Shown one piece after another: positions 2,381-29,821 of a stretch of 32,000 nt of DNA. Numbering within the stretch: position 1 is the stretch's first letter; each line of letters opens with the position of its first letter. Position numbers and translations under genes: made by a program. Source of the DNA: Wallemia ichthyophaga EXF-994 (lineage: Eukaryota > Fungi > Basidiomycota); NCBI RefSeq assembly GCF_000400465.1, contig NW_008806277.1, forward strand, positions 270,001 to 302,000, in the 5' to 3' direction. The notes under the pieces were generated by a model, which was not told where the DNA came from, did no database searches, and saw only the letters and a program-made list of their open reading frames with translations.

Positions 2381-5276
2381 CTATCTCCCATACTCCCGCC
2401 CATTATACACCGCCGGATCTACCCAGTGATGAGGTACATCTTCTTGCATCGGTGACTGCTGTGGTGGCGGTGCTGGTGGTGGCGGATAGTATGGTCCCCC
2501 ACCGTATCCAGAAGGTGGTGGGTAGTATGGTGCCTCCCCGTACCCATACCCACCAGGAGGTGGATACGAAGGTGGTGAGTAATTATTGTATCCACTCCCA
2601 CCACCACCCATTCCCGGTGATCCTCTCGAGAATAGTTTGTTCCTTCTCCGTTTGGTTGGAAGTGGTGCTGCTGCCATATATCCAGGTCTTCTACGACGAC
2701 AGCATCCACCAAAGATGCAGCTAAATATTCCATACACCACCAATATCACCACAATTGCAATAATGATTGTTACCGGTATAGCTATTTGCAGATTTTGCCT
2801 GTACCAATTCTTGAAGATATCCTGCCAACTACCTTGCTTACAGTCACCTTTCTCGCAAGTCCCTCCATATCCACACTGCGAGCCATCTCTAAGTGGTGTT
2901 TGAATCCTTACGCATCCACCACCTGATGGATTCTCGCATGTCACCAGACACGTAGTGTCACCTCCCATATCGCATGAGCTAGTGAGACCCATAGATGATC
3001 CAGCCGATTTGCACTGATCGTCTTCTGAAGTGCACAATCCTGTAGCGCAATGCTTACCGTCACCGCAATCCTTTCCATTCTCTTTATACTCATCATCGGG
3101 ACATTTACCAGAGTCGCCCGTACACTTCTCCTCCATGTCGCACTTATCGTCTATCGACGGCCTGCATACTTGACTAGATGAAGCGAATTGGCAGTTATCA
3201 TTACAGCAACCGTCAGTACTAGAGTCACAAACCGCGCCATTCTTGAATTTACACTGATCTGTGCAGCAATTAGTTTCACCACCTCCGTCGCACTCTTCGT
3301 CGTCCTCTAAGATGCCATTCCCACACTGCTTTAGACTCTTTATTTCGCGATCCGCGCTGGAAGGGTCGAGGAGGCAGGATGTGCTAGTCTGGCCACTCCC
3401 CAGAGCCGAGCAGATGTTGCCAATGGAGCAGTCACTGAATCCCGTTGCACTGTCCGATTTGGTCGCGGACATGATGTAGTTATTGTTCGCATTGCACGTG
3501 TCACTGTTTAGTGGGCAGCACGACTGCTGAAAACTGCACCCATCGTCGCAGTCGTGGATCGCACCGACTGTGTGAGAGTGTTAGCGGAAAAATGAATCAA
3601 CACAGAAAACAAGTGCATACGTACAGTTATGCCCGATTTCGTGCGCAGCTACAGCCCACTGGTTGCGCGTTATCGTCGTCACTGCCGTGCCAGAAACAGA
3701 CTGCGAGCTCTGAGAGCGCACATCCTGCTGGCAAAGTGTGCCTAACCACGCAACGCCGACCTTGCTGCCCGTATTGCAATTCGTCTGTATCACATAATCA
3801 GATTTATCACATTAGTGCATTATCCATCCAACCCACCATTAGATGCCACAACCCTATCCCGTCATCTCCCTTCTGGCCTCGCCAAGCAGAAAATAGTGAG
3901 AGACGATCATTGAGCTCTACATCACCACCGCACGCCTGATTCCATGGGACGGTATCGTTGCGAGTATCAGGACATTCAGGCTCCTGTACATTAAGCTCTA
4001 CAACGCCCAATGATATTTTGAAACTATCCTTGTATAGTCCCGATATCTGGTTGACATCTTGCAGGATCTGCGTGCGAGCCTTCTCGGCATTATCGTAGTT
4101 CTCGACATAGGTGCAATCAGCAGCGAAACCCATATAGAGCAGGCGCTGTTCGGTAGGACAGCCCTCTGTGCTGCCGATAGTATCGACGTAGCTCGACGCA
4201 GGCTCGTCATTACCACCGCTGACATCACCGGTGCCCTGTCTCTTTGCACGCTTGCTGTAGCGGTCTCTGGCTTGCGTGATTGCGCGATCAAGTGTGTGGT
4301 CGTCGATTGGAGCGAAGCGTACGTATGGCTTGGCTGTCTCTGTACCGAATAAGACGTCGAGCCATTTCTTTAAAGACAATGTCCAGCTGGGCTGCTCCTC
4401 TACCATAGTGAATGGTGTTAGTGGTTCGATTGGTTCGAGTGAAGGGTAGTGTGTACTGTCAGTACCGCAAGTCGCGGTGAGTGTGGTATTTGTGCGCTCA
4501 ACAGTATCACTCTCTTTAAATATTATCAGCCTGGATGGATGGTAGGATGGCGAGGGGTCATCGTCGCCCTTGCTAGCAAGGTAAGACGAAGGTGTCTTGA
4601 TGTGATAAAGCTCGCTATCGAAAGTGAATGAACCTTCAAATTGCGGCGAGCTGCCAGAATCAACGCCGTCATCGTGAATCATAATATTAGCACGCCCACG
4701 TATGCTATAAAAAGAGTCAGCCTAACCAAACACATTGTTGAGAGGCGACATACATATCATCTTGGGTGAAAATATTACCAAAATCATAATTCCTTATAAT
4801 TCTAGCTGCGTCTTCAGCAACGCGTCTATCGGAGTGCTCTGAGGAGACAGTGTAACCGTGATAGACTCTAAAATTTTCCTTTTGGAGGAGTTCAGAGTGA
4901 TGGACATGGCCGGACTTGTTGAGGTAGTTGACGCGTGCGTGTGGGTGAAATAAGTCTTCATTTGGGTGCAAATGGAGATTGAAATGCTCGCCGTCGAGAA
5001 GAAAAGAGATGCGGAGGTTATCGGTGGACTTTACTGCGGGGGAGGTATCAACGTGTCTGCTGGCTAGCGACGGCCACGTGTGGGGATCTCTGGGTAAAAC
5101 GTCAATGGCGACGTCATTTGGGTTTGAGAGGCGTGTTAGTGGAGATGGCTTGTGAGAGTGAGATGAAGCTGGGAGATGGGAAATGGACAACTGTAAGCGT
5201 GTACACTACGATAACAAGATAAATACCCACAAAATGCGATTAAATTAAGGTATAAAATCAAAATAAATAATTTCAT
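2381..5276 (-). CDS. ADAM-family zinc metalloprotease/disintegrin (type I membrane protein)
   Basis: Four introns join ORFs 4717-5190, 3807-4682, 3581-3793 and 2381-3472. The zinc motif HEIGHN|FGAIHDC is split by a phase-1 intron, and the Met-turn is YIMSA. Also present: prodomain ending RYSKRAKR, Cys-rich disintegrin (ILEDDEECDGGG, CRPSIDDKCDMEEKC), a TM helix and a Pro/Tyr-rich tail. The signal-peptide exon MKLFILILYLNLIAF from 5276 is inferred and less certain. Confidence 0.92.
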
Positions 5277-5397: not shown

Positions 5398-6210
5398 ATG
5401 ACATCTCCCACTCCCCAGAATCCTTTCATCGACGACGACGGTGATAATCCTTTCAGCGAGACTCACGCACTCAACAAGCAATTCGACGATGACGACAATC
5501 TCGAAACCCCCACTCAGTCGCACACTTTCACCTACCCCACCACATCCGCAGACCACCGAGAGGAGGATTTGGCGAGGAGAGAGGCTGATATCCATCTCCG
5601 AGAGAGCCGCATGAAGCAATTCGGCAGGAACAATTGGCCCCGATTCTATCCCCTCATATACTGGGATATCCGCGAAGAAATCCCCTTGGAACACCGTTCA
5701 ACTACTCTTCTTGCTTACAGGCTTTGGCTGTTCCTAATTGCTGTATTCGCTATCAACTGGGTTGGCTGCCTCCTCCTTATCCAGGGCGACGGCTTTGAAA
5801 GTCTGGCTGCTGCCAGCGGTTATCTCTTCATTATACCCATCTCCTTCTTGCTCTGGTTGAGACCTCTCTACAATGCCCTGATGAAAGGCCACGCTTTTTA
5901 CTACCTCGTCTACCTCTTTTTCGGCGGCTGTCATCTCGCTTTCTCCGTCTACGTCCTGATCGGTATACCAAACACAGGCGGTTTTGGCATCGTCAACACT
6001 ATACGCGCCTTGGCGTCCGGAAAGATAGCCTCTGGTGTTTTGGGCGTCGTCAGCAGTGTTGGATGGGCAATACAAGGTCTCGGTTTCTGCTGGGTGTACT
6101 TGCAAGTCTACAAGCAGTACAAGCAGAAAGGATTGACTATCGACGCTGCCAAGTCGGAAGTCACCGCTCATGGCTTTAGAGCGTATTTCTCGCGCAATTC
6201 CAACATATAA
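5398..6210 (+). CDS. Secretory carrier-associated membrane protein (SCAMP family)
   Basis: Intronless ORF with first ATG at 5398. Two N-terminal NPF motifs (QNPFIDDDGDNPF), the conserved NNWPRFYPLIYWDI motif, four hydrophobic segments, and an E-peptide-like FLLWLRPLYNALMK. Confidence 0.92.
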   Translation: MTSPTPQNPFIDDDGDNPFSETHALNKQFDDDDNLETPTQSHTFTYPTTSADHREEDLARREADIHLRESRMKQFGRNNWPRFYPLIYWDIREEIPLEHRSTTLLAYRLWLFLIAVFAINWVGCLLLIQGDGFESLAAASGYLFIIPISFLLWLRPLYNALMKGHAFYYLVYLFFGGCHLAFSVYVLIGIPNTGGFGIVNTIRALASGKIASGVLGVVSSVGWAIQGLGFCWVYLQVYKQYKQKGLTIDAAKSEVTAHGFRAYFSRNSNI

Positions 6211-6274
6211 AAGGTTTAAAGTAGTGTACACGACGCAGAAGAAAGTGAAATGGTAAATGGTACATGAACTAAGT

Positions 6275-10278: not shown

Positions 10279-13200
10279 ATGATGCGCGATGTCAGCATAA
10301 ATATCAGCGTAAAATTCACTCAGCCGCGATTAGATGCGCGCGGTCAGCAATTGCCCCCGATTCTCCTAGACGATGGCAATCTCGAGCCGAATATCAACAT
10401 CTCACTCGATGTTCCACACCAAGATGAGGTTTTGGCTAGGAGTGGTACACCTACGCGTGTCCTACAGATGGATGGTGACGATGAGCAGCCTCATTTCCCC
10501 GGTGCTCTGCTGCGTAGTGGGGGAAATGCTCGCACTCTGCAGTATAACAGACACAGCTTCAAATCCAGGGATTTCAAATCAGAGACTGCGCCTTCTTCTT
10601 CTAAGCATATACGTAGCAGTGGCAGTGGCAGTGGCAGCGGCAGCGGGCGCGATAATTCACTCGCAGAGAATGAGATTAAGGATGAAAGTAGGTTCTGCGC
10701 GGTGTGGAGGGTGTATTCATCTCACACGCCTCACCAGACGATAGTAGCTCTAAAGATGATGCTGATGGCTACAGCGACGGCAGCTTGACCCCCATACCCG
10801 ACTCACCACCGCGTAAGAAAGGCAAAGCACGGGTGTCGCACGTGAAACCACTTTCAGATAACGAGGCAGACCAGGGTGGGTATTTGAGAGTCGCTGGCTT
10901 TGCTGGTACGAAAGACACGGTACAGAGCAACTCGAGATCAGATGGCGCTGTACATCGCGCTCCACAGTCACAGTCGCGATCGCAAAGGTCTAAACCAGTC
11001 CATATTCAACCAACTGAATTACAACCAACTGGTCCCTTATACCAAACTCAGCCTCCCAGCGAAACGTCTGGCATTAAGTCCAAGTACATCACCCCTTCTC
11101 GCTTTGAGGAAATATACCTCCAGCGGGCTGAAGAAATGAGATTGGCTCAGCTCGAGCATGTTCGCTTGCAGAAAGCACACGTACAAGCAGATCATTTGGT
11201 TGGGTCGCACAATGGCAACGGCGAAGCTGGTCCATCGCAAAGCAAGAAAGCTAAATTGTCTCAGCCACAGAAGTCTACGCTCAGTTCAAGCAGTAAAACT
11301 CCAATCAATCAATCACCACTGGTGTCTGATGAGATAGACGCGTCAGCTACCTCGAGGCGATCTTCTCTACCTCCACCTGCACATACATCAGAAAACTCTA
11401 CTCTCAACTCAAAGGGAAGGGATGATTCGTTGCAACCAAAGGAGGCACCAGCTTCAGAGTCGCGGAGTTCGAACGTCGCCAACGTTGCTCAAACTACAGA
11501 CGCATTAGCTAGACAACCTTCTCCGAATCGATCAGCAAGCTCTTTCAACAGAATATCCGTCCATTCTCCTCTTGCTGACAGTGAAAAAGACCCTTCAGCT
11601 CCTCAATCAGCTTCTCAATTAAATCCCCATCCGGCTCTTAATTCTACTCTTCCCTCAGCTCCTCCAGACAAAAGCTCTGATTATGGTAAGAGATCATCGA
11701 GTCGCTTGAAGTCAACCGGAATGGATCTCCAGAGTTTGTCAAGCAAAAGAGACTCGATTTATCGCGAAAGATCTCCCGAGACTGAGTCTGCATCAAAGCC
11801 CAAGTCGAAGCCCAAGCCTAAGCCTAAATCGAAGTCTAAAACACCCTCCGGCACACCTAACTCAAATAAGTCGTCGTCGAATGATTCAACGTCGAATGAT
11901 CTACCTAATAAACCACCGAGTGATCTTTCAAATAATGTTTCAAAGCCATCGAATAAAGGTCCTTCTGCTTCATTCGAGAAGATCACACTTCGACTTCCTG
12001 GTCCGTCAAAGAATGGCGAGATGAACGAATCACTGAAAATTCTTAGTAACTCCAACTCGCCGCCAGGACTCTTCGAAAGTAGACCCGAACCTCCTTCATC
12101 TAGCGTAAACGCGCAGAATCAGGCGTCTGCAGGTCCTGCAGATCCCAATCAACCTTCCACCAGCTCAGAGCCACCCAGAACAGACTTTTTGAACCGCAAG
12201 ACTTTTATGTTCAAAACCCAGACTCCAGAATCATATCTTTCACAGACACTGAAGAAGCGCAAGCGGAAATCTGATAAGTTGGCATTGGCGCAGTCGAAAT
12301 TTGCAATTGATGATGGTGCTAATAAGCACGTAAATGATCCAAACAAGCCAGTAAAAGCATTCGAAATGAGCGAGGTGTTCAAGGAAGCCCAAATACTTCA
12401 CCTCTTCGATCCTATACCAAAGCCTTCACTGGAGGAAAATCGTCAGTCATTTCACAATTCTAAACCGGCTCCGAGTCCCATCGAAGAGAATGGATACTCT
12501 CTCCCCGATTATAACTCGTCTTCAATTATACCACCAAGATATGACGGTCGCTTTGCAAACGACTTCAAAGAACAAATAGATCGTAGACTCGAGATATTGG
12601 ATATAGCAAGATACTATCCGAATTTGGTTCCAGTGGCTAATAATCCAATAACGAAAATGGACCTAGTTACATACTTTGATAATATCAGTGTTGAAGGTCT
12701 ACACAGAAACGCAATTACTGTACCCATCTACAAATGTTTCTTTGGTGATGGACGTATGGTTGAAAAGGCACTACACAAGAAGATATTACTCACAGTGACT
12801 GACAGTTGTATGCTCCTGATGGACACTGCGACCACTTTGGCCAAAATATGGAGAGTGATTCCGTTCTACTTGATTAGTGATCTGAAGGTAAGGAAAAATG
12901 AAGATCGTCTTTGAATCGACTAATAATATTCCAGTTACGCGATGACCCTCGTGACTTGCCTTTAATAACGTTCAAGATCGACCCTAGAGATGAGATATCG
13001 CATCACATGAGTACAGCCGAGATATCTTTCGATCCGGGTGAGCTGGGTGGGAGTATGGTGAGCACCAACTAACAACTAAACAGTGCATGAATGGATTTCA
13101 TTCTTTGTTGACAACAAACACCCTTATTTTCATGAAGTTTCGCTCAAAAATTGGGCATACAACATGCGAAGAGTGATAACATTGAAGAACAGACCAATCG

Positions 13201-23155: not shown

Positions 23156-25915
23156 TCATGTTCTGCGTTGCTTCTTTTGTGTTGATTTCTTGGTATATGT
23201 TTTTCTTTTTGCTGGGGGTTTGCCTTCGTTGGGACAGTTGCTAGCCCAGTGTCCCTTCTTGTTACACTTGTAACATGTGTCACCTTTCTTTGTATTATTA
23301 ACACCGACACCGCTGGACGATGACTTCTTGGATTTTACAGTGGATGTGGATTTAGGTGCAGGTCCTGTTGTCGGATTGGTACATCTTGCCGGCCAATGTC
23401 CGTTCCTACTGCAAAGATCGCAGTAGGGGATCTCACCATCATCATCTGCGATCAATTCATCACCCAACAAATCTTCCTCACTATCATCAACAACTTGAGC
23501 AGATGTATTTGGACTATCCATTGAATCCTCCCATGACCAGAAACCACATTGCGCAGTCTTTGAAGTATTGGGACATTTCCAAAATGCCCTGCCTTTATTT
23601 GCACCTTGTGAGGTGACGAATCGTTTAGCTGAGAGGTCACATTTGCAGCGCACTTGACCCTCTTTTGGCGGTTGAGCTTTGTGATTAGAGTTGGACTTTG
23701 TTGGTGGTTCATACATCTGCGTTACTCTGAATTCAGATGCGTTACCATTGCTCCGACTTGTTCTGCTTGCACCTGTCGTGCGTTGACTAGTCGTTCCGCG
23801 CGGTCGCCCTCTGCCGCGAGGAGGCGGAGGTGCATCATCCATATCGCTATCGCTATTGTCGTTGTTGTTGTTATTATTGAATCCACCAAACCCGCCACCG
23901 CCTTCGTCTTCGCCTCGGGCATTTTGATCATTCTCCGCAATGACATTGTCATCAAATGCATCAGCATTCTGTAGGTAGTGCTTCACACTATTCACCAGAG
24001 TTGCAAATTGAAGGGCTGATCTGTTGTATATATCTCTATACTGATTAATCGATTCGAGCAAAACGTCACTCTTCTGGGCTATACCTTCACCTATCATGTT
24101 CATCTTTTCCTCGTTCTCCCGCCTGAGTTGAGGTTTAGCGAAACTCTTGTCGAAATTCATCTTATTGTATCCTTCAACTAGTGCAACGCCGAGCGTAGAA
24201 GGTACAAGGTACTTGGTAGATCCCAATTTGTGCTCCATGACATATTCTCTGTCGATAATTTTGTGTATATGTTCAGCAATAGTGGCATCAGTGCCTATAC
24301 CATTCTTGTCCATCAAAGAGACGAGATCAGCTTCAGTGAGCAATGTCGGTGGTGTAGTTTTACCCTCTCTTAATTCGCAAATAGACGGCTGAAATACCTC
24401 ACCCTGTTCAAAATTAGGTATGGTTTGATTTGACCATTTCTCGTAGATGTATACCTCTAAATAGTTCTTCTCAATCAGGACAGACCCCGACGCTTTAAAT
24501 ATCTCTCCAGCCATCTCTAACTCAGCGGTTGTGTTCTTTCCTTTAGCATCTTTGGAGCAACTAGCAAGAAATCTGCGTGTAATTAACTCATATACTCGCT
24601 TCTCATTTCCAGATAATGACGGTGCATGGGCGGTAGGATGGATCGGTGGATGCGCCTTGTCGTTCTTCTTTCCGTTACGTGGTCTATCAAATCTATCAAA
24701 TTGAAGTGACTGTGCATATTCTCCCCATGTTGAGTTGGCTGTCTGCTTTTCTATCAGCGATTCGAAGTTGAACGATGGATCGTATTGGTCTGTTTCTGTA
24801 CGTGGATATGAAAGAAAGCCCTGTTGATATAATTTTTCAGCTATCTGTTCTGTCATCAGCTTAGCTTTTTACTTGTTTTTTTACCACTCACATCCAAGAC
24901 TTGTTTCGGAGAAAGTTTTAGCAACCGAGATCCAGATTTCTGTAGCTCAACTGTAGTCAAAGGGTAGGGCTTGTATTTAGTGTGTGGCTTGGTCTCCACT
25001 TTGGTCACTCTTGCTGTGGGATTAGTGATGCATCTCTCATACAGCAAGAAGGCAATCTGAGCATCAAACAGTCGATCACGTTTCCAGTTGAATGTCACAG
25101 CTTTCTTTCTGCCATTTTCTTCACGATGGTTGATAGAGAGGAAGATGTACCAGAAATTTTCCGTAATAAAATCCTTTATACGCTGGTATTGATCGACTAC
25201 GAAACCCAAAGTTGGAAATTGACAAGGTCCTGATAATCAGATGAGCAGAGCAAGCTGGTGGAAATAGAGCTCCCTTACCGTATGATATCAGCTTCCCGTC
25301 GAGCTCCGCCACCTGTTTTGATAAATTGAGAGTCATTAGTCTAGTAAAAGCGGCACCGATGCGTAAATCCAATTCAATACGCGTCTCAACAGCGCGAACC
25401 TGCTTCATATCCAACATAACAGGATTACGAGCAGCGTGATGAATCTGATTGGGTATGATAGCTGAAAACTTCGCCCGAATCACTTCAATTCTCGGATTGG
25501 CCTGTCTGCATACATTCACAATCTCTGATCCAATATGTTCACCTTCACGATCGCAATCTGTCCATATCATCAGATGACTCGCGCGTCTAGCTTCACTTTT
25601 GAGATTATTCTCTATAGCAGACATGCTGCTTGATGTGCTTATCTCCACTCTCCCATTAAATAATTGGACAGGATCGCAACTGTGCCATTTGCGCATCTCT
25701 TTGGGGAATTCAGCCGTGGTGAGATGACCAGCAACGGCAGTGACAGTGAAATCTACCTGGCGACCGTTATACCCAGACATTTTATAACTGAAGTCATAGT
25801 TTTTTATGAATTTGCTCGAAGTGCTGCGTGTATTGAAGCTGCCCGATGAGAGGATCTGGGTGATTGATTTCGATATCGAAGGTTTTTCAGCAACGCATAA
25901 ATATTTTACTGTCAT
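23156..25915 (-). CDS. TOP3: DNA topoisomerase III alpha with C-terminal GRF and two CCHC zinc fingers
   Basis: Introns 25278-25230 and 24891-24845. Toprim VAEKPS and IWTDCDREGE, SYG|PCQFPTLGF, catalytic Tyr in GFLSYPRTET, DKAHPPIHPT and GIGTDAT. Confidence 0.97.
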
Positions 25916-25987
25916 CTCTTCATCGCCTTGCCGCCGCTAGTGGTGGTGGTCGATGGCCGTTTGAGATAACAAGCAAGACGCGTAAAG

Positions 25988-26607
25988 ATGAGCAGAAAGG
26001 TTCTTGTGAATGAGAAAACGATTGGCGGGCTTCTGAGTACGCTGAATGAGAATAAGCCATCTGCTATTAAAACTGTTACGCGACGATTGAATCAAAATAC
26101 TCTCAATTCACGCCCTATACCGGCAGAAATTGGCGCAAAGATTGATGAGCTGTACGACAAGTATAAGGTGGTTGGATGTGATGAGACTGCTATTGCTATT
26201 CGAAGAATAATGACAAACATCAAGGGCATCCTTGATGCTGTCGATTCGGAGAGAGTGGGTTTGGTGGTGGTGAAGGGCTAGTAAAACTCACAATTCACAG
26301 AAAGATCAGATCTTAATGAGCTTATGGCTGGTTGTACGTCGTTATTCGCGTATTACTTTTTTATACACTGACGTACGTCTAGATACTGCTTAGCAGAAAA
26401 TCAGACAGCAACTCAGAGCAAGCAGCAGCAGAGCTTAACAACAGCGCCGCAAATCCGCTCAAAATGCCGTCGGAGCTGACTTGGTACACCATTCTATCAC
26501 AAGATCCATTGCTTGGGGATCACTGGCGGGAGGACAGCTACGCCCAGAGTGACAATCTGTCTGAATGGAGTGATAGTGAGAGTGAGAAGGGAGAGGAGTA
26601 TATGTAG
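25988..26607 (+). CDS. 174-aa protein resembling only the N-terminal helical domain of gamma-tubulin complex component GCP5 (TUBGCP5/Mod21-like), no GRIP domains
   Basis: Exons 25988-26254, 26301-26333, 26383-26607, with introns of 46 nt (GTGGGT...CAG) and 49 nt (GTACGT...CTGAC...TAG) that keep the frame. Product: MSRKVLVNEK...AEIGAKIDELYDKYKVVGCDETAIAIRRIMTNIK...RKDQILMSLWLVILLSRKS...LTWYTILSQDPLLGDHWREDSYAQSDNLSEWSDSESEKGEEYM*. The CDS is well supported; the GCP5 assignment is by recalled similarity. Confidence 0.65.
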
Positions 26608-26637
26608 AATTGTACATTATAAGACTTTGTAAAAATG

Positions 26638-26667
26638 TCGTAATCGTAATCGTAATCGTAATCGTAA
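26638..26667. repeat. (TCGTAA)5 hexanucleotide microsatellite
   Basis: Five perfect TCGTAA units in the 95-bp gap between two convergent stop codons. Confidence 0.95.
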
Positions 26668-26702
26668 CTGGAAGATAAATAAAGGCTATTGGTTGGATTG
26701 AG

Positions 26703-28019
26703 TCAAGCGATCGGACTGCGCTCGTGCGTGCGCTCCTCTGACTGTACGAGATCTTTGGCAGCTCTCTTAATATCCTGTGGAGCTTGATTGTTATTTTTCC
26801 TAACCATATCAATATATTTGAGCACGATGTCAGCTTCAACTTGACCGCTTAGAGTATCCCAGAATTCAAAACTGACTGTACCATTGGACTGGTTATGCCT
26901 GGTGTTAGATGGATCGTGCACCTCAATTTCAATCGTTGCTGGTTTGCTCGCAATTTTACGTGATCCCTCCGATGGTATAGATTTTTCATGCGCTTTCTCT
27001 TTCTCATTTAATGGTGTCTCTGGTTGCTCGAATGCCACACTCGCTTTGCGCGAGTTTGGAGAACCAGGTGGTGTGATTGTCGTTGATTTGTCTCTCTTCA
27101 ATTGCGTAGTGTGGATTGACGTTATCTTACTGAATGGAACGTTTATACTCGTTAGCGCTTGATCGTTGATATAGAGAGGAAAGGGTTTGTGTTGAGCAAG
27201 GTCGGTATCCTGCGTAGACCATCTGCGTGGTTTTTGTGTGCCTTGATGCTCGTCATCTTTGTGAGTCTCATCACCAGTCTCATACCAATTGAGGTTGAAT
27301 GTTGGACCTTTCTCTTCCTCTTGCTGTTGAGCTTGTTCTCCCAGTCCCTCCACTTGCTCCGATTCTTCGTCCACCGCAGTAGTATGGCTATCATTACTAG
27401 AAGAAGAACGTCTCTTGATAGCTTCAAGAATGCTACCTCTTCTTCTAACGTTCTGCTGCTCTGTACTTGCAGGCTCATCGAGGAGAGACAAGAGTGAAGA
27501 TTTGCGTTTATGATCCACAGAAGCATCTGCCGGAATACCGCCTTTACCCAGAGCTCTGAGTACAGAAGAGCGTCTTCTTTGATGTTTTTTAGAAACCTCT
27601 CGTGGACGGTTGAGTGGATCCAAAACAAGAGTGAGCTGGTCCTAACGAGACAGTCAATGTAGCTCGTATTTCATTAAGTGTTACCCAATTCTACCCACAT
27701 TCCAAAACCACAATTTGGCTGATAGGTTGAAGATATTTCCGCAGCTTTCTTTCTTGTGTGAATTGAATTTCTCTTGTTCTGCTAGCTGCGTAGCTTCACT
27801 CTTCTTACTAAACTTACGTTTTGGAGAGTGCGGTGGATTGAGCGGAACATCTAACTCATTTCCACTCAATGTAAGTTGTACTGGCAGTGGTTCTCGTGAT
27901 GTATACGTTGGCTTTGATATTTGAGATGTGTAAAAGCTTCTGTCTCGTGGCCAAGGCATTCTTGGTGCCAGATTGTTTGGGTTCTCTTCAAATGCTACCT
28001 TTGTAGTGACAAACTGCAT
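26703..28019 (-). CDS. Uncharacterised 419-aa protein, rich in basic-basic-x-Ser motifs
   Basis: Exon 28019-27699 joins exon 27641-26703 across a 57-nt GTGGGT...TAG intron (KLWFWN|DQLTLVLDPLN). No family recognised. Confidence 0.75.
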
Positions 28020-28251: not shown

Positions 28252-29821
28252 CTAGAGTCGTCTACCACGCTCTTCAGAGGGTCCAGGTCCAACTGAGGTT
28301 GAAGGTACTGCAGCTGCTGATGCAATATTCTTATCAAAGCTTGGTGTCTTTTTCAATACACCTTTACGTACTGTCGGTTGCTGATGAGCGCTTTGTGTGC
28401 TTTGTGTGCTTTGTGTGCTTGGTGGTTGTTGGCTTATATCTTCAATCTCCTTGTCATCATCATCATCATCATCAAAGTCATCAAATCTTCCAGTAAAATA
28501 ATCGAATTCGTCATTATCCTCCCATGCACCCGGATGAAAACCATGGGCAGGTGAGGCTAAAGGAGGTTCAGCTCGAAGTGCGGCTGATGGTTGTGAAACA
28601 GGGCTGTCTTCATCTGAGGAGTTGTTGTAGAAAGAAGACCTGCGAGCAGTTGGAACATAATCTGGATTGCTATCACCTGGAGCCTCTGGAACTACATCAT
28701 ATTCATTATCCTCATCATCTGAACCATGTGGATTCGTTTTCAATTGAGTAGGTTCAATTTCCGCAATGGTAATGTGATCAGGTGCAGGTATCGAGGATAA
28801 GTCGGAGGCTACGCTAGATGACCTTGTCCTGGATTTGGAAGATATATTGTTTGACGTAGATCTGCTCCTAAAAGTTAAACCTTCATCCTCACTTGAAAAA
28901 TTTTCTTCGTTGGGGGAAGCGATGGGATCTTCTGCAACACGTTCTGGTTCGTCCAAGGAAATTCTCTGTTCAACAAAGTTGTTAAAAGTGATATGTCTCT
29001 TGCTGGCACCAGAGCTGTTGCTGGCGTCACCGTCGGAGGTAGTAGGATTAGGTGTCATGTGCTTTGAAGATTCAGATTCATTGTACTGTTGATTGACAGA
29101 GTCACTGTTGTGTAAAGCAGCTTTTATCAAAGGTTCAGAGTGAGACACTTGGAATTTTGGTCTCTTGGGCTCAGTAGGGGAAGCAGCGACGGAGGAACCA
29201 GGGCTAGTATCAGACTGAAAGTCAGAAGGAACATCAGACTGATCATCATCAGGTATAGCATCAATTGAAGGGGATTGTTGGGAAGGCATCGTTAGTAACT
29301 CAGATATAGTGCGATGCTTCAAGATGGGTTTTGTACCATGACCTTGATCTAAATCGATGTGATCCTCTAAAGTGGATGCTTTTGGTTTTGGAACTGGATC
29401 GACAGCGGTGTGTAGTGGACCATATAGCCAAGTAACGTCACTATCTTTGAGCCTACATACGTGTGAGAAATGGCTCGAACTAACCAATAAAAACCCTACC
29501 AATTCAAAGTCTCAGGGCTAATAGTCTTCAGTTTATTCCGTTGCTTCCACCAAGTTCTCCAACTAGCGTTCTCTAATCGAATACCATTTGAAATATCATT
29601 CTTATGCTTTGTCATTGATCTCCAGCTTGTCCAAACATCCTCCTCATCCCATTCGTGGCTGAGATAATCAACGCATATTGAAGGCAGCCTCGTTTGAGCG
29701 TCTGCATCGTCTGGAGCGTGGCCAGTCGTTTCTGCTGACACAGTCTAAACAAGGGAATATTAGCGTGAGCTGTTTAAACAATTCTCAAGCGTACTGCCGG
29801 AGATGGAACGAATTGGGCCAT
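28252..29821 (-). CDS. REG1: Reg1-like protein phosphatase 1 regulatory subunit (DUF1752-type N-terminal domain)
   Basis: Exons 29821-29795, 29744-29500, 29452-28252. Motifs CVDYLSHEWDEEDVWTSWR, RLENASWRTWWK, TLNW|LKDSDVTWLYGPL, KPILKHRTISELL and the PP1-docking KRHITF (yeast Reg1 RHIHF-like). Confidence 0.88.
28391..28420. repeat. Coding 9-bp tandem repeat (CTTTGTGTG)3, encoding QST repeats in the Reg1-like tail
   Basis: Three adjacent CTTTGTGTG units; the minus-strand translation is TQSTQSTQS. Confidence 0.85.

What the first reader, a model, noticed from the sequence alone, without database searches (positions are those of the whole stretch)
25988..26607. Stand-alone GCP5 N-terminal helical domain: a gamma-tubulin complex micro-protein with no GRIP domains
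Seen in sequence: two clean introns extend the 97-aa ORF to a 174-aa protein that stops at 26607. An AT-rich tail and microsatellite follow, then a convergent gene 95 bp away, so there is no room for more coding sequence. Recalled homology: EIGAKIDELYDKY...AIAIRRI matches human GCP5 KIEKTIEGIYEKF...AASWKRL; ILMSLWLVILLSRKS matches YSILSLLLCLSDSP; LTWYTILSQDP...EWSDSESE matches FDWGKYLMEDE...NWSEESEE. Established: GCP5 is normally 800-1000 aa with GRIP1/GRIP2 domains that build the gamma-TuRC ring, and its N-terminal helical domain intercalates with MZT1. Inference: this lineage either split GCP5 in two or lost the ring-forming part and kept a free MZT1-binding module as an adaptor or decoy. 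That would be an undescribed reduced microtubule-nucleation system. Intact splice signals and an open frame argue against a decaying pseudogene.
Basis: partly seen in the sequence, partly recalled or inferred. Interest (0 to 1): 0.8.

Follow-up and report, generated by a model that had tools for sequence, protein, structure and literature searches.

The report
Free-standing GCP5 N-terminal module in Wallemia
The salt-loving fungus Wallemia makes, as a separate conserved 174-residue protein, the N-terminal piece that other organisms have at the front of the large microtubule-nucleation subunit GCP5; this would be a natural test of whether that piece works on its own.

Summary
The window is Wallemia ichthyophaga. 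Three exons (25988-26254, 26301-26333, 26383-26607, + strand) give a 174-aa protein identical to the NCBI model E3P92_03140. A convergent gene ends 95 bp downstream.

The homology claim also holds:
- A two-sequence Wallemia profile, searched against 1.84 billion proteins, hit the N-terminal ~150 residues of 842-1128-aa Tulasnella and Dispira proteins (E 2.7e-8 to 1.9e-4). These proteins carry GRIP1, GRIP2 and GCP5-Mod21 domains.
- hhalign gave 98.9% probability.
- A joint profile hit the solved GCP5 N-terminus:Mozart1 structures (6L82, 6L81) and human GCP5 residues 19-126.

Four Wallemia-lineage genomes keep the same short three-exon gene beside TOP3, with dN/dS 0.11 for the one unsaturated pair. 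It is therefore neither a pseudogene nor an assembly artefact.

Most likely it pairs with Mzt1 and docks in trans on the gamma-tubulin complex. In human the equivalent module is the "latch", joined to the GCP5 core by about 118 unmodelled residues.

Not resolved:
- whether a GRIP-bearing GCP5 core is encoded elsewhere (gene fission) or was lost;
- whether Wallemia has Mzt1.

The tools could not reach either question. I rate it a new variant of a known kind, of moderately high interest.

The parts
25988..26254 (+). Exon 1 (aa 1-89): helices 1-4 of the GCP5-like N-terminal helical domain, including the invariant K58 and D86
   Evidence: Translation and splice check. Identical to the NCBI protein. 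Aligned to GCP5 N-termini.
26255..26300 (+). Intron 1, 46 nt, GTGGGT...CAG, phase 0; retaining it gives a stop after 8 codons
   Evidence: Same position in W. mellicola (45 nt), the Logan Wallemia species (46 nt) and the AT-rich relative (71 nt).
26301..26333 (+). Exon 2 (aa 90-100, KDQILMSLWLV): start of helix 5
   Evidence: Corresponds to the 'LP.HL.LL' block of full-length GCP5.
26334..26382 (+). Intron 2, 49 nt, GTACGT...CTGAC...TAG, phase 0
   Evidence: Position conserved in all four species.
26383..26607 (+). Exon 3 (aa 101-174 plus the TAG stop): end of the helical domain (ILLSRKSD...), the Trp motif and the acidic tail
26476..26526 (+). Conserved motif LTWYTILSQDPLLGDHW (aa 132-148). 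W134, I137, P142, G145, H147 and W148 are invariant across Wallemia, Agaricomycete and Dispira sequences.
   Evidence: Alignments A5/A6. Also present in the ascomycete-type metagenome loci L011 and L012.
26548..26604 (+). Acidic Ser/Glu tail SDNLSEWSDSESEKGEEYM (aa 156-174). It corresponds to the 'SLSPWDDSD' stretch of full-length GCP5. The protein ends here, whereas GCP5 continues into the linker and GRIP1.
   Evidence: Full-length proteins continue with a 'QYW' linker motif and GRIP1.
25916..25987 (.). 72-bp divergent intergenic region shared with the TOP3 gene on the minus strand
   Evidence: The TOP3 first-exon ORF ends at 25915. The TOP3 neighbour is conserved in all four species.
26608..26702 (.). 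95-bp gap to the stop codon of the convergent minus-strand gene; contains (TCGTAA)x5 at 26638-26667; no room for further exons
   Evidence: The W. mellicola gap is 97 bp.

Best explanation
The gene encodes a functional, free-standing copy of the N-terminal extension of gamma-tubulin complex protein 5 (GCP5/Mod21). It has three parts: a helical domain of about 115 residues, the conserved LTW..IL..P..G.HW motif, and an acidic tail. It has no linker and no GRIP1/GRIP2 core.

Shown: the homology to GCP5 N-termini, the stand-alone gene structure, and purifying selection.

Inferred: like the GCP5 N-terminus in the solved complexes, the helices interleave with the microprotein Mzt1 to form a compact module. 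That module docks non-covalently on gamma-tubulin complexes, where it would act as an adaptor or 'latch'. [quoted passage not shown]

Why a detached version is plausible: in human the module is joined to the GCP5 core only by about 118 unmodelled residues, and it works four spokes away from that core.

Open: whether the GCP5 core still exists as a separate gene (fission) or was lost.
For: Homology:
- Profile hits to full-length GCP5 of Tulasnella and Dispira at whole-library E 2.7e-8, 6.5e-7, 1.6e-6 and 1.9e-4, covering query residues ~20-167 against their residues ~35-234.
- Those proteins carry PF17681, PF04130, PF20685 or PF14609.
- 111 of 115 GCP5 proteins were hit once, collinearly, in the N-terminus.
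- hhalign gave 98.9% probability, E 1.3e-17, over 129 columns.

Solved relatives: Chaetomium GCP5 N-terminus with Mozart1 (6L82, E 7.6e-6), human GCP5 residues 19-126 (E 2e-4), 6L81 (E 1.1e-3) and S. pombe Mod21N (6L80, E 0.077). No GCP3 or GCP6 N-terminus was hit.

Structure model: seven helices at pLDDT 67.6.

Selection and stand-alone status:
- Same three-exon gene of 168-182 aa, with its stop after the acidic tail, beside TOP3 in four genomes.
- dN/dS 0.11 for the unsaturated pair; other pairs have pS 0.80-0.88 and pN 0.21-0.41.

Mechanistic plausibility:
- PMC13187424 identifies 5NTE:MZT1 as the gamma-TuRC latch. It contacts the GCP3 C-GRIP domain through 5NTE residues 70-80 and 115-125.
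- By the alignment, those residues correspond to Wallemia 57-67 and 101-111. These include K58 and the LS.KSD block, which are invariant in the four Wallemia-lineage sequences.
- PMC8789826 places the same module on the outer face of GCP3.
Against: - No binding or localisation data exist.
- Whether Wallemia has Mzt1 could not be determined.
- The Pfam model for the GCP5/Mod21 N-terminus (PF14609) does not match any of the four proteins.
- Foldseek on the monomer model gave no significant match (best E 0.96). GCP N-terminal chains 6L80, 6L82, 6L81 and 7QJ0_l, together with short chains of the gamma-TuRC entry 9QVM, only recur among the weak hits.
- The Trp motif and acidic tail, which are the best-conserved parts, have no assigned function in any structure read here.
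- If the normal partner of those parts is the GCP5/4/6 core and that core is gone, the protein may do something else.
Confidence: 0.6

Rival explanations
1. Gene fission with reassembly. The GRIP1/GRIP2 core of GCP5 is encoded at another Wallemia locus. The two polypeptides work together as an ordinary GCP5 within a GCP4/5/6-containing ring, so the nucleation system is not reduced. This is a sub-case of the best explanation, not a contradiction of it.
For: The N-terminal module is under strong constraint, including the Trp motif and acidic tail, which lie in the tether region of full-length GCP5. The natural tether is long and unmodelled in human (PMC13187424), so cutting it should be tolerated.
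Against: No Wallemia GRIP protein appeared when full-length GCP5 proteins were used as the query. That search cannot see relatives at ~25% identity, so this is weak evidence. No GRIP gene lies in the 32-kb window.
Confidence: 0.45
2. Core loss. Wallemia lost the GCP5 core, perhaps with GCP4 and GCP6. It keeps only the N-terminal module as a free Mzt1-binding latch or adaptor for rings built from GCP2/GCP3 subcomplexes.
For: Every contact of the human 5NTE:MZT1 latch described in PMC13187424 is with components other than the GCP5 core: GCP3, gamma-tubulin, alpha-tubulin and MZT1. The gene is not at the position GCP5 occupies in Tulasnella or Coprinopsis.
Against: PMC13187424 states that the latch is specific to organisms with GCP4/5/6 and is absent from budding-yeast rings. 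Absence of the core in Wallemia is not demonstrated.
Confidence: 0.4
3. A remnant with a new job. The fragment survived because it acquired a function unrelated to gamma-tubulin complexes.
For: Some segments are Wallemia-specific, for example NSRPIPAEI in the loop before helix 3. There is no Pfam match.
Against: The positions conserved within Wallemia are the same ones conserved in full-length GCP5: K58, D86, W134, I137, P142, G145, H147 and W148. This argues that the ancestral interactions are retained.
Confidence: 0.12
4. Not a real gene: a decaying pseudogene, a mis-assembly that hides a full-length GCP5, or missed downstream exons.
For: None beyond the unusual length.
Against: - The structure is the same in independent assemblies: many W. 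mellicola genomes, a Logan assembly, and ENA metagenome contigs.
- The frame is open and the splice sites are intact in four species.
- dN/dS is 0.11, and third-position changes dominate.
- Only 95-97 bp separate the stop from a conserved convergent gene.
Confidence: 0.02

Closest known systems
GCP5 / Mod21 / GCPE N-terminal extension (5NTE, N-terminal helical domain) in complex with MZT1; structures 6L80, 6L81, 6L82; the gamma-TuRC 'latch'
   Same: Homologous sequence over ~130-150 residues. All-helical prediction with the same order of helices. The segments that contact GCP3 in human align to conserved Wallemia blocks (PMC13187424).
   Different: In every described case it is the first ~120-250 residues of an 800-1200-aa protein with GRIP1 and GRIP2. 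Here it is the whole protein. Mzt1 binding is not shown. PF14609 does not match.
MZT1 / MZT2 microproteins of the gamma-tubulin ring complex
   Same: Small, separately encoded helical subunits that work only by interleaving with a GCP N-terminal domain. The Wallemia protein would be the other half of such a module, also separately encoded.
   Different: No sequence relationship: PF12554 is not matched. It is two to three times longer. It is the predicted partner of MZT1, not a paralogue of it.
C. elegans GTAP-1, a GCP5-derived protein (bioRxiv 10.64898/2026.08.03.742184)
   Same: Another lineage in which the two parts of GCP5 have come apart during evolution.
   Different: It is the mirror image. 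GTAP-1 keeps the GRIP1/GRIP2 domains and has an N-terminus with no obvious MZT1-binding domain. Wallemia keeps the N-terminal domain as its own gene.
GCP3 and GCP6 N-terminal helical domains (MZT1 modules of the lumenal bridge; 6X0U, 6M33)
   Same: The same kind of MZT1-binding helical module.
   Different: Neither was hit by the profiles. Every significant full-length hit is of GCP5 type.

Membership tests
GCP5 / Mod21 (gamma-tubulin complex component 5) | N-terminal helical region homologous to the GCP5 N-terminal extension | tested here: met
   Whole-library HMMER E 2.7e-8 to 1.9e-4 against GCP5 N-termini. hhalign 98.9%. 6L82, human GCP5 and 6L81 hit by the joint profile.
GCP5 / Mod21 (gamma-tubulin complex component 5) | Match to Pfam PF14609 (GCP5-Mod21_N) | tested here: not met
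   No hit at E<=10 for any of the four Wallemia-lineage proteins. The model is insensitive here: only about 14 of the 113 Agaricomycete GCP5 proteins carry it in the precomputed column.
GCP5 / Mod21 (gamma-tubulin complex component 5) | GRIP1 domain (PF17681) preceded by PF20685 | tested here: not met
   The protein ends at residue 174, right after the acidic tail. No Pfam GRIP hit. Only 95 bp lie before the next gene.
GCP5 / Mod21 (gamma-tubulin complex component 5) | GRIP2 domain (PF04130) that binds gamma-tubulin | tested here: not met
   Absent from the protein and from the whole 32-kb window.
GCP5 / Mod21 (gamma-tubulin complex component 5) | Occupies a spoke of the gamma-tubulin ring complex | not testable with these tools
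   Needs biochemistry or cryo-EM. Without GRIP domains it cannot form a spoke.
GCP N-terminal domain:MZT1 module | Helical bundle that interleaves with MZT1 | tested here: inconclusive
   The monomer AF2 model has seven helices at pLDDT 67.6. Foldseek gave no significant hit. 6L80 (TM 0.50-0.62 on the target), 6L82, 6L81 and 7QJ0_l, together with short chains of 9QVM, recur among the weak matches. A complex prediction was not possible.
GCP N-terminal domain:MZT1 module | An MZT1 partner encoded in the same genome | tested here: inconclusive
   The MZT1 profile search returned 1502 hits, of which only the top 120 were listed: 119 vertebrate or unnamed sequences and S. pombe Mzt1 itself. Wallemia could not be checked.
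MZT1/MZT2 microproteins | Match to PF12554 (MOZART1) or sequence similarity to MZT proteins | tested here: not met
   No such Pfam hit. Not a member; the resemblance is only that both are small, separately encoded subunits.

The most novel reading that the evidence does not exclude
Wallemia has lost the ring-forming cores of GCP5 (and perhaps GCP4 and GCP6). It retains the GCP5 N-terminal module as an independent protein which, together with Mzt1, seals or targets rings built only from GCP2/GCP3 subcomplexes. That would be a latch without its spoke, showing that the module is an autonomous functional unit of microtubule nucleation.
Probability: 0.3. Interest if true: 0.8.

Novelty: new variant of a known kind. 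Interest (0 to 1): 0.62.

Why it matters
In human, the GCP5 N-terminal extension bound to MZT1 has only recently been identified as the latch that seals the gamma-tubulin ring during nucleation (PMC13187424, 2026). It acts far from the GCP5 core, joined to it by a long stretch that is not modelled in the structure.

A lineage that has encoded this module as a separate, strongly conserved gene across four genomes whose synonymous sites are mostly saturated is a natural experiment. It suggests the module can work without a covalent link to the core.

If the core proves to be absent, the module would also work with simple GCP2/GCP3 rings. That would contradict the current view that the latch belongs only to complexes containing GCP4/5/6.

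It also gives a name and a testable role to a protein now annotated as 'hypothetical' in all sequenced Wallemia genomes. Papers searched for Wallemia with gamma-tubulin, spindle pole body, or GCP4/5/6 loss describe nothing like it.

Tried and rejected
1. A single-sequence Pfam scan, PDB phmmer search and word-index homologue search with the 174-aa protein found only Wallemia orthologues and noise.

2. An AF2 model from the two-sequence alignment was unusable (pLDDT 40). The 20-row alignment gave pLDDT 67.6, but Foldseek against the PDB found nothing significant. This is expected for a domain that folds around a partner.

3. A search for a Wallemia GRIP protein using an alignment of five full-length GCP5 proteins returned 113 hits and no Wallemia protein: 112 Agaricomycete (or unnamed) GCP5 proteins and one ascomycete GCP2. 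Simulations using Dispira as a stand-in show why: a relative at ~25% identity shares hardly more 5-residue words with the queries than a shuffled sequence does. The negative result is therefore uninformative, and I did not repeat the search.

4. I spent the last homologue search on MZT1, using a profile of human, Xenopus, S. pombe and Chaetomium sequences confirmed from the PDB. It gave 1502 hits, but only the best 120 are listed, and none of those named is Wallemia. This was a dead end.

5. Synteny test for truncation in place: the GCP5 genes of Tulasnella and Coprinopsis are not next to TOP3, so no conclusion follows.

6. The JGI metagenome scan found two loci, both ascomycete-type GCP5 N-termini that read on into the linker. 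They are not stand-alone genes.

7. A profile of the Trp motif alone against the PDB did not hit human GCP5.

8. P0006 (E 2.2e-9) is a bacterial repeat protein that matches through ten copies of a 'CDELYD' stretch. I rejected it as spurious.

9. The 736-aa ORF with no Pfam match at 10704-12914 is a low-complexity Ser/Pro-rich protein, not a hidden GRIP gene.

Full report
What is in the sequence

The window is from Wallemia ichthyophaga, a halophilic basidiomycete. The spliced product of the region is 100% identical over all 174 residues to the NCBI protein 'hypothetical protein E3P92_03140 [Wallemia ichthyophaga]'.

The gene has three exons on the + strand: 25988-26254, 26301-26333 and 26383-26607. 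Its two short phase-0 introns are GTGGGT...CAG (46 nt) and GTACGT...CTGAC...TAG (49 nt). Joining the exons gives a 525-nt in-frame CDS. Retaining either intron gives early stops. The 97-aa ORF listed mechanically is exon 1 read through into intron 1.

The stop codon ends at 26607. The next gene is a convergent minus-strand ORF whose stop is at 26703, so 95 bp lie between them. That gap contains a perfect (TCGTAA)x5 microsatellite at 26638-26667. Upstream, the TOP3 (topoisomerase III) gene starts only 72 bp away on the other strand.

Is it a real, selected gene?

The same gene is present in three further Wallemia-lineage genomes:
- W. mellicola: 168 aa, 67% identity; seen on 22 contigs, four loci fetched as L001-L004.
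- A third Wallemia species assembled from SRR25399871 (L005).
- A more distant, very AT-rich relative found in ENA metagenome assemblies (L006-L008). Its exon-1 and exon-3 ORFs appeared separately in the protein searches as P0010 and P0005/P0012.

All four share these features:
- TOP3 lies immediately upstream on the opposite strand.
- Both introns are at the same codon positions with GT..AG ends.
- The stop falls a few residues after the acidic tail, giving products of 168-182 aa.

The convergent gene, a GATA_AreA gene and WDR36/Utp21 follow downstream in W. mellicola and the SRR25399871 species, matching the ORFs in the window. The contigs of the AT-rich relative show no called gene of that kind in the ~1.5 kb held downstream.

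Exons are better conserved than introns or flanks. Differences between W. ichthyophaga and W. mellicola fall 49/31/110 on codon positions 1/2/3. For the only pair whose synonymous sites are not saturated, Nei-Gojobori gives dN 0.105, dS 0.95 and dN/dS 0.11. For the other pairs pS is 0.80-0.88 while pN is 0.21-0.41.

This excludes a decaying pseudogene. The agreement of independent assemblies excludes a mis-assembly that hides a long gene.

What is it related to?

Direct searches with the single protein found nothing beyond Wallemia: Pfam, PDB by sequence, and the word-index search.

An exhaustive HMMER search of 1.84 billion representative proteins, using a profile of the two annotated Wallemia proteins, gave nine hits at E<=0.001:
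- W. mellicola itself.
- Three short Wallemia-lineage ORF fragments.
- One spurious bacterial repeat protein (P0006).
- Four long proteins: P0007 (842 aa, E 2.7e-8), P0008 (1100 aa, 6.5e-7), P0009 (906 aa, 1.6e-6) and P0011 (1128 aa, 1.9e-4).

In each long protein the match is a single stretch. It pairs query residues ~20-167 with residues ~35-234 of the target.

The four are 'Spindle pole body component' proteins of Tulasnella (Agaricomycetes) and Dispira (Zoopagomycota). They carry GCP_N_terminal (GRIP1), GCP_C_terminal (GRIP2) and the GCP5-specific families PF20685 or PF14609.

Using them as queries returned 113 proteins: 112 Agaricomycete (or unnamed) GCP5 proteins, several annotated 'gamma-tubulin complex component 5', and one ascomycete GCP2. 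A three-sequence Wallemia profile hits 111 of the 115 collected proteins. The hit is always single and collinear, and almost always lies within the first ~330 residues.

Profile-profile comparison of four Wallemia-lineage sequences against 18 GCP5 N-termini gives 98.9% probability, E 1.3e-17, over 129 aligned columns at 28% identity.

The multiple alignment is convincing by eye. Every helix block lines up, and K58, D86, W134, I137, P142, G145, H147 and W148 are invariant across Wallemia, Agaricomycetes and Dispira.

A joint profile searched against the PDB hits:
- the Chaetomium GCP5 N-terminus crystallised with Mozart1 (6L82, E 7.6e-6);
- full-length human GCP5 at residues 19-126 (E 2e-4);
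- the human GCP5 N-terminus:MZT1 crystal (6L81, E 1.1e-3);
- more weakly, S. pombe Mod21N (6L80, E 0.077).

It hits no GCP3 or GCP6 N-terminus (the 6L8x entries are identified).

The third, the Trp/acidic stretch, is not recovered against human. It is, however, the most conserved element among the fungal GCP5 sequences examined, including two ascomycete-type loci from JGI metagenomes.

So the protein is homologous to the N-terminal region of GCP5, and to GCP5 specifically.

Where the protein ends relative to full-length GCP5

The Wallemia protein begins at the first helix; the Ser/Arg-rich leader of Agaricomycete GCP5 is missing. It ends just after the acidic 'S..LS.WSDS' stretch. Full-length proteins continue with a linker of about 80-100 residues carrying an invariant 'YW' motif, and then GRIP1.

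None of this is present at the Wallemia locus. No GRIP-type gene lies anywhere in the 32-kb window.

Structure

With a 20-row alignment, AlphaFold2 predicts seven helices (9-17, 24-38, 44-62, 65-84, 87-104, 109-123, 134-139) at mean pLDDT 67.6. Residues 50-100 are the most confident, and the tail is disordered.

Foldseek against the PDB finds nothing significant (best E 0.96). GCP N-terminal chains 6L80, 6L82, 6L81 and 7QJ0_l, together with short chains of the gamma-TuRC entry 9QVM, recur among the top 20 weak matches. The best TM-score is 0.62, normalised on the 6L80 chain.

This is inconclusive, as expected for a domain that adopts its shape only when interleaved with MZT1.

How it most likely works

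What is established in the literature:
- The GCP5 N-terminal extension forms a helical module with MZT1 (crystal structures 6L80-6L82).
- In recombinant human gamma-TuRC this module sits on the outer face of a GCP3 GRIP2 domain (PMC8789826).
- A 2026 cryo-EM study identifies it as the 'latch' that seals the seam of the closed, nucleating complex (PMC13187424). [quoted passage not shown] An N-terminal loop of 5NTE touches alpha-tubulin at spoke 2.
- The module is joined to the GCP5 core at spoke 10 by 118 unmodelled residues.

What I infer:
- The contacts described for the module are with proteins other than the GCP5 core, and the tether is long. A version encoded as a separate polypeptide could therefore do the same job in trans.
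- By the alignment, the two GCP3-contacting segments correspond to Wallemia residues 57-67 (DKYKVVGCDET) and 101-111 (ILLSRKSDSNS). These contain K58 and the LS.KSD block, which are invariant in all four Wallemia-lineage sequences.

I therefore think the protein pairs with Wallemia Mzt1 and docks on gamma-tubulin complexes as an adaptor or latch. My confidence is about 0.6 for this mechanism and above 0.9 for the homology.

The Trp motif and acidic tail are even more conserved. Their partner is unknown; they fall in the part of human GCP5 that is not modelled.

What could not be settled

The key open question is whether a GRIP-bearing, N-terminus-less GCP5 exists elsewhere in Wallemia (gene fission) or was lost.

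The one exhaustive search was used on the N-terminal profile. The word-index search with full-length GCP5 found no Wallemia GRIP protein. Simulations show it could not have found one at the expected ~25% identity: Dispira shares 8.9 words with a five-sequence query set, against 5.2 for a shuffled copy, and restricting the query to conserved blocks does not help.

The presence of Mzt1 in Wallemia is also undetermined. The last search returned 1502 MZT1 hits, but only the top 120 are listed, and none of those named is Wallemia.

The GCP5 genes of Tulasnella and Coprinopsis are not next to TOP3, so synteny does not show whether the Wallemia gene was truncated in place.

I put fission and core loss at roughly equal odds.

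Comparison with what is known, and novelty

The protein works like, and is homologous to, the GCP5 N-terminal extension. It is not a GCP5 in the family sense: GRIP1, GRIP2 and PF20685 were tested and are absent, and PF14609 does not match. It is not related to MZT1 or MZT2, though like them it would be a small, separately encoded helical subunit.

The nearest evolutionary parallel is the reverse case in C. elegans. There the GCP5-derived GTAP-1 keeps the GRIP domains, and its N-terminus shares no obvious homology with the MZT1-binding domains of GCP5 and GCP6 (bioRxiv 10.64898/2026.08.03.742184).

No paper in the library links Wallemia to gamma-tubulin, and the three that mention both Wallemia and the spindle pole body are taxonomy or database papers. 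No paper combines GCP4-6 loss with Basidiomycota. The protein is annotated 'hypothetical'.

The exhaustive search found stand-alone forms only in the Wallemia lineage, and the two JGI loci read on into the linker.

Verdict

I class it as a new variant of a known kind. Interest is moderately high (0.62). It is a clean, well-supported natural separation of the latch module from its spoke. It would become more striking if the GCP5/4/6 cores prove to be absent.

Noticed in passing
window 23156-25915 (-): Topoisomerase III gene (Toprim, Topoisom_bac, GRF zinc ribbons, CCHC knuckles). Its start codon lies only 72 bp from the start of the small gene, so the two probably share a bidirectional promoter. 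The pairing is conserved in all four Wallemia-lineage genomes.
   Followed up: partly
window 26638-26667: Perfect hexanucleotide microsatellite (TCGTAA)x5 in the 95-bp gap between the two convergent genes. It does not align in W. mellicola or the SRR25399871 species.
   Followed up: partly
L006-L008 (ENA metagenome assemblies ERZ28598171, ERZ27248851, ERZ28598219), gene at about 5550-6225: A very AT-rich, Asn-rich relative of Wallemia carries the same gene beside TOP3, with longer introns (71 and 56 nt). It appears in 53 index blocks of the ENA and Logan assemblies. The organism was not identified.
   Followed up: partly
L009 (Tulasnella calospora) and L010 (Coprinopsis cinerea): In both Agaricomycetes, full-length GCP5 lies within ~10 kb of an aldehyde dehydrogenase gene and an FAA_hydrolase gene. 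This hints at old microsynteny that the Wallemia locus does not share.
   Followed up: no
window 26703-27623 (-) and 28252-29502 (-): Two Ser/Glu/Asp-rich, low-complexity ORFs with no Pfam match in the window. W. mellicola has genes of 381 and 481 aa at the same relative positions; the second of those is annotated GATA_AreA.
   Followed up: partly
window 10279-12914 (+): Long ORF (736 aa, plus a possible 169-aa upstream exon) that is Ser/Pro-rich and largely low-complexity, with no Pfam family. Only the last ~150 residues look globular.
   Followed up: partly
window 2381-5190 (-): Fungal ADAM-like metalloprotease spread over three ORFs: reprolysin propeptide, M12B catalytic domain and disintegrin domain.
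   Followed up: no
P0006 (hit): A 1563-aa bacterial protein with 14 InlB B-repeat-like domains and a sulfatase domain scored E 2.2e-9 against the Wallemia profile. The score comes only from ten repeats containing 'CDELYD'. This shows how repeat proteins can inflate whole-protein E-values.
   Followed up: yes
P0007 and P0017 (Tulasnella sp. 427): The same strain has two near-identical GCP5 entries (842 and 887 aa) on different contigs. They may be haplotypes, a recent duplication, or differing gene models.
   Followed up: no
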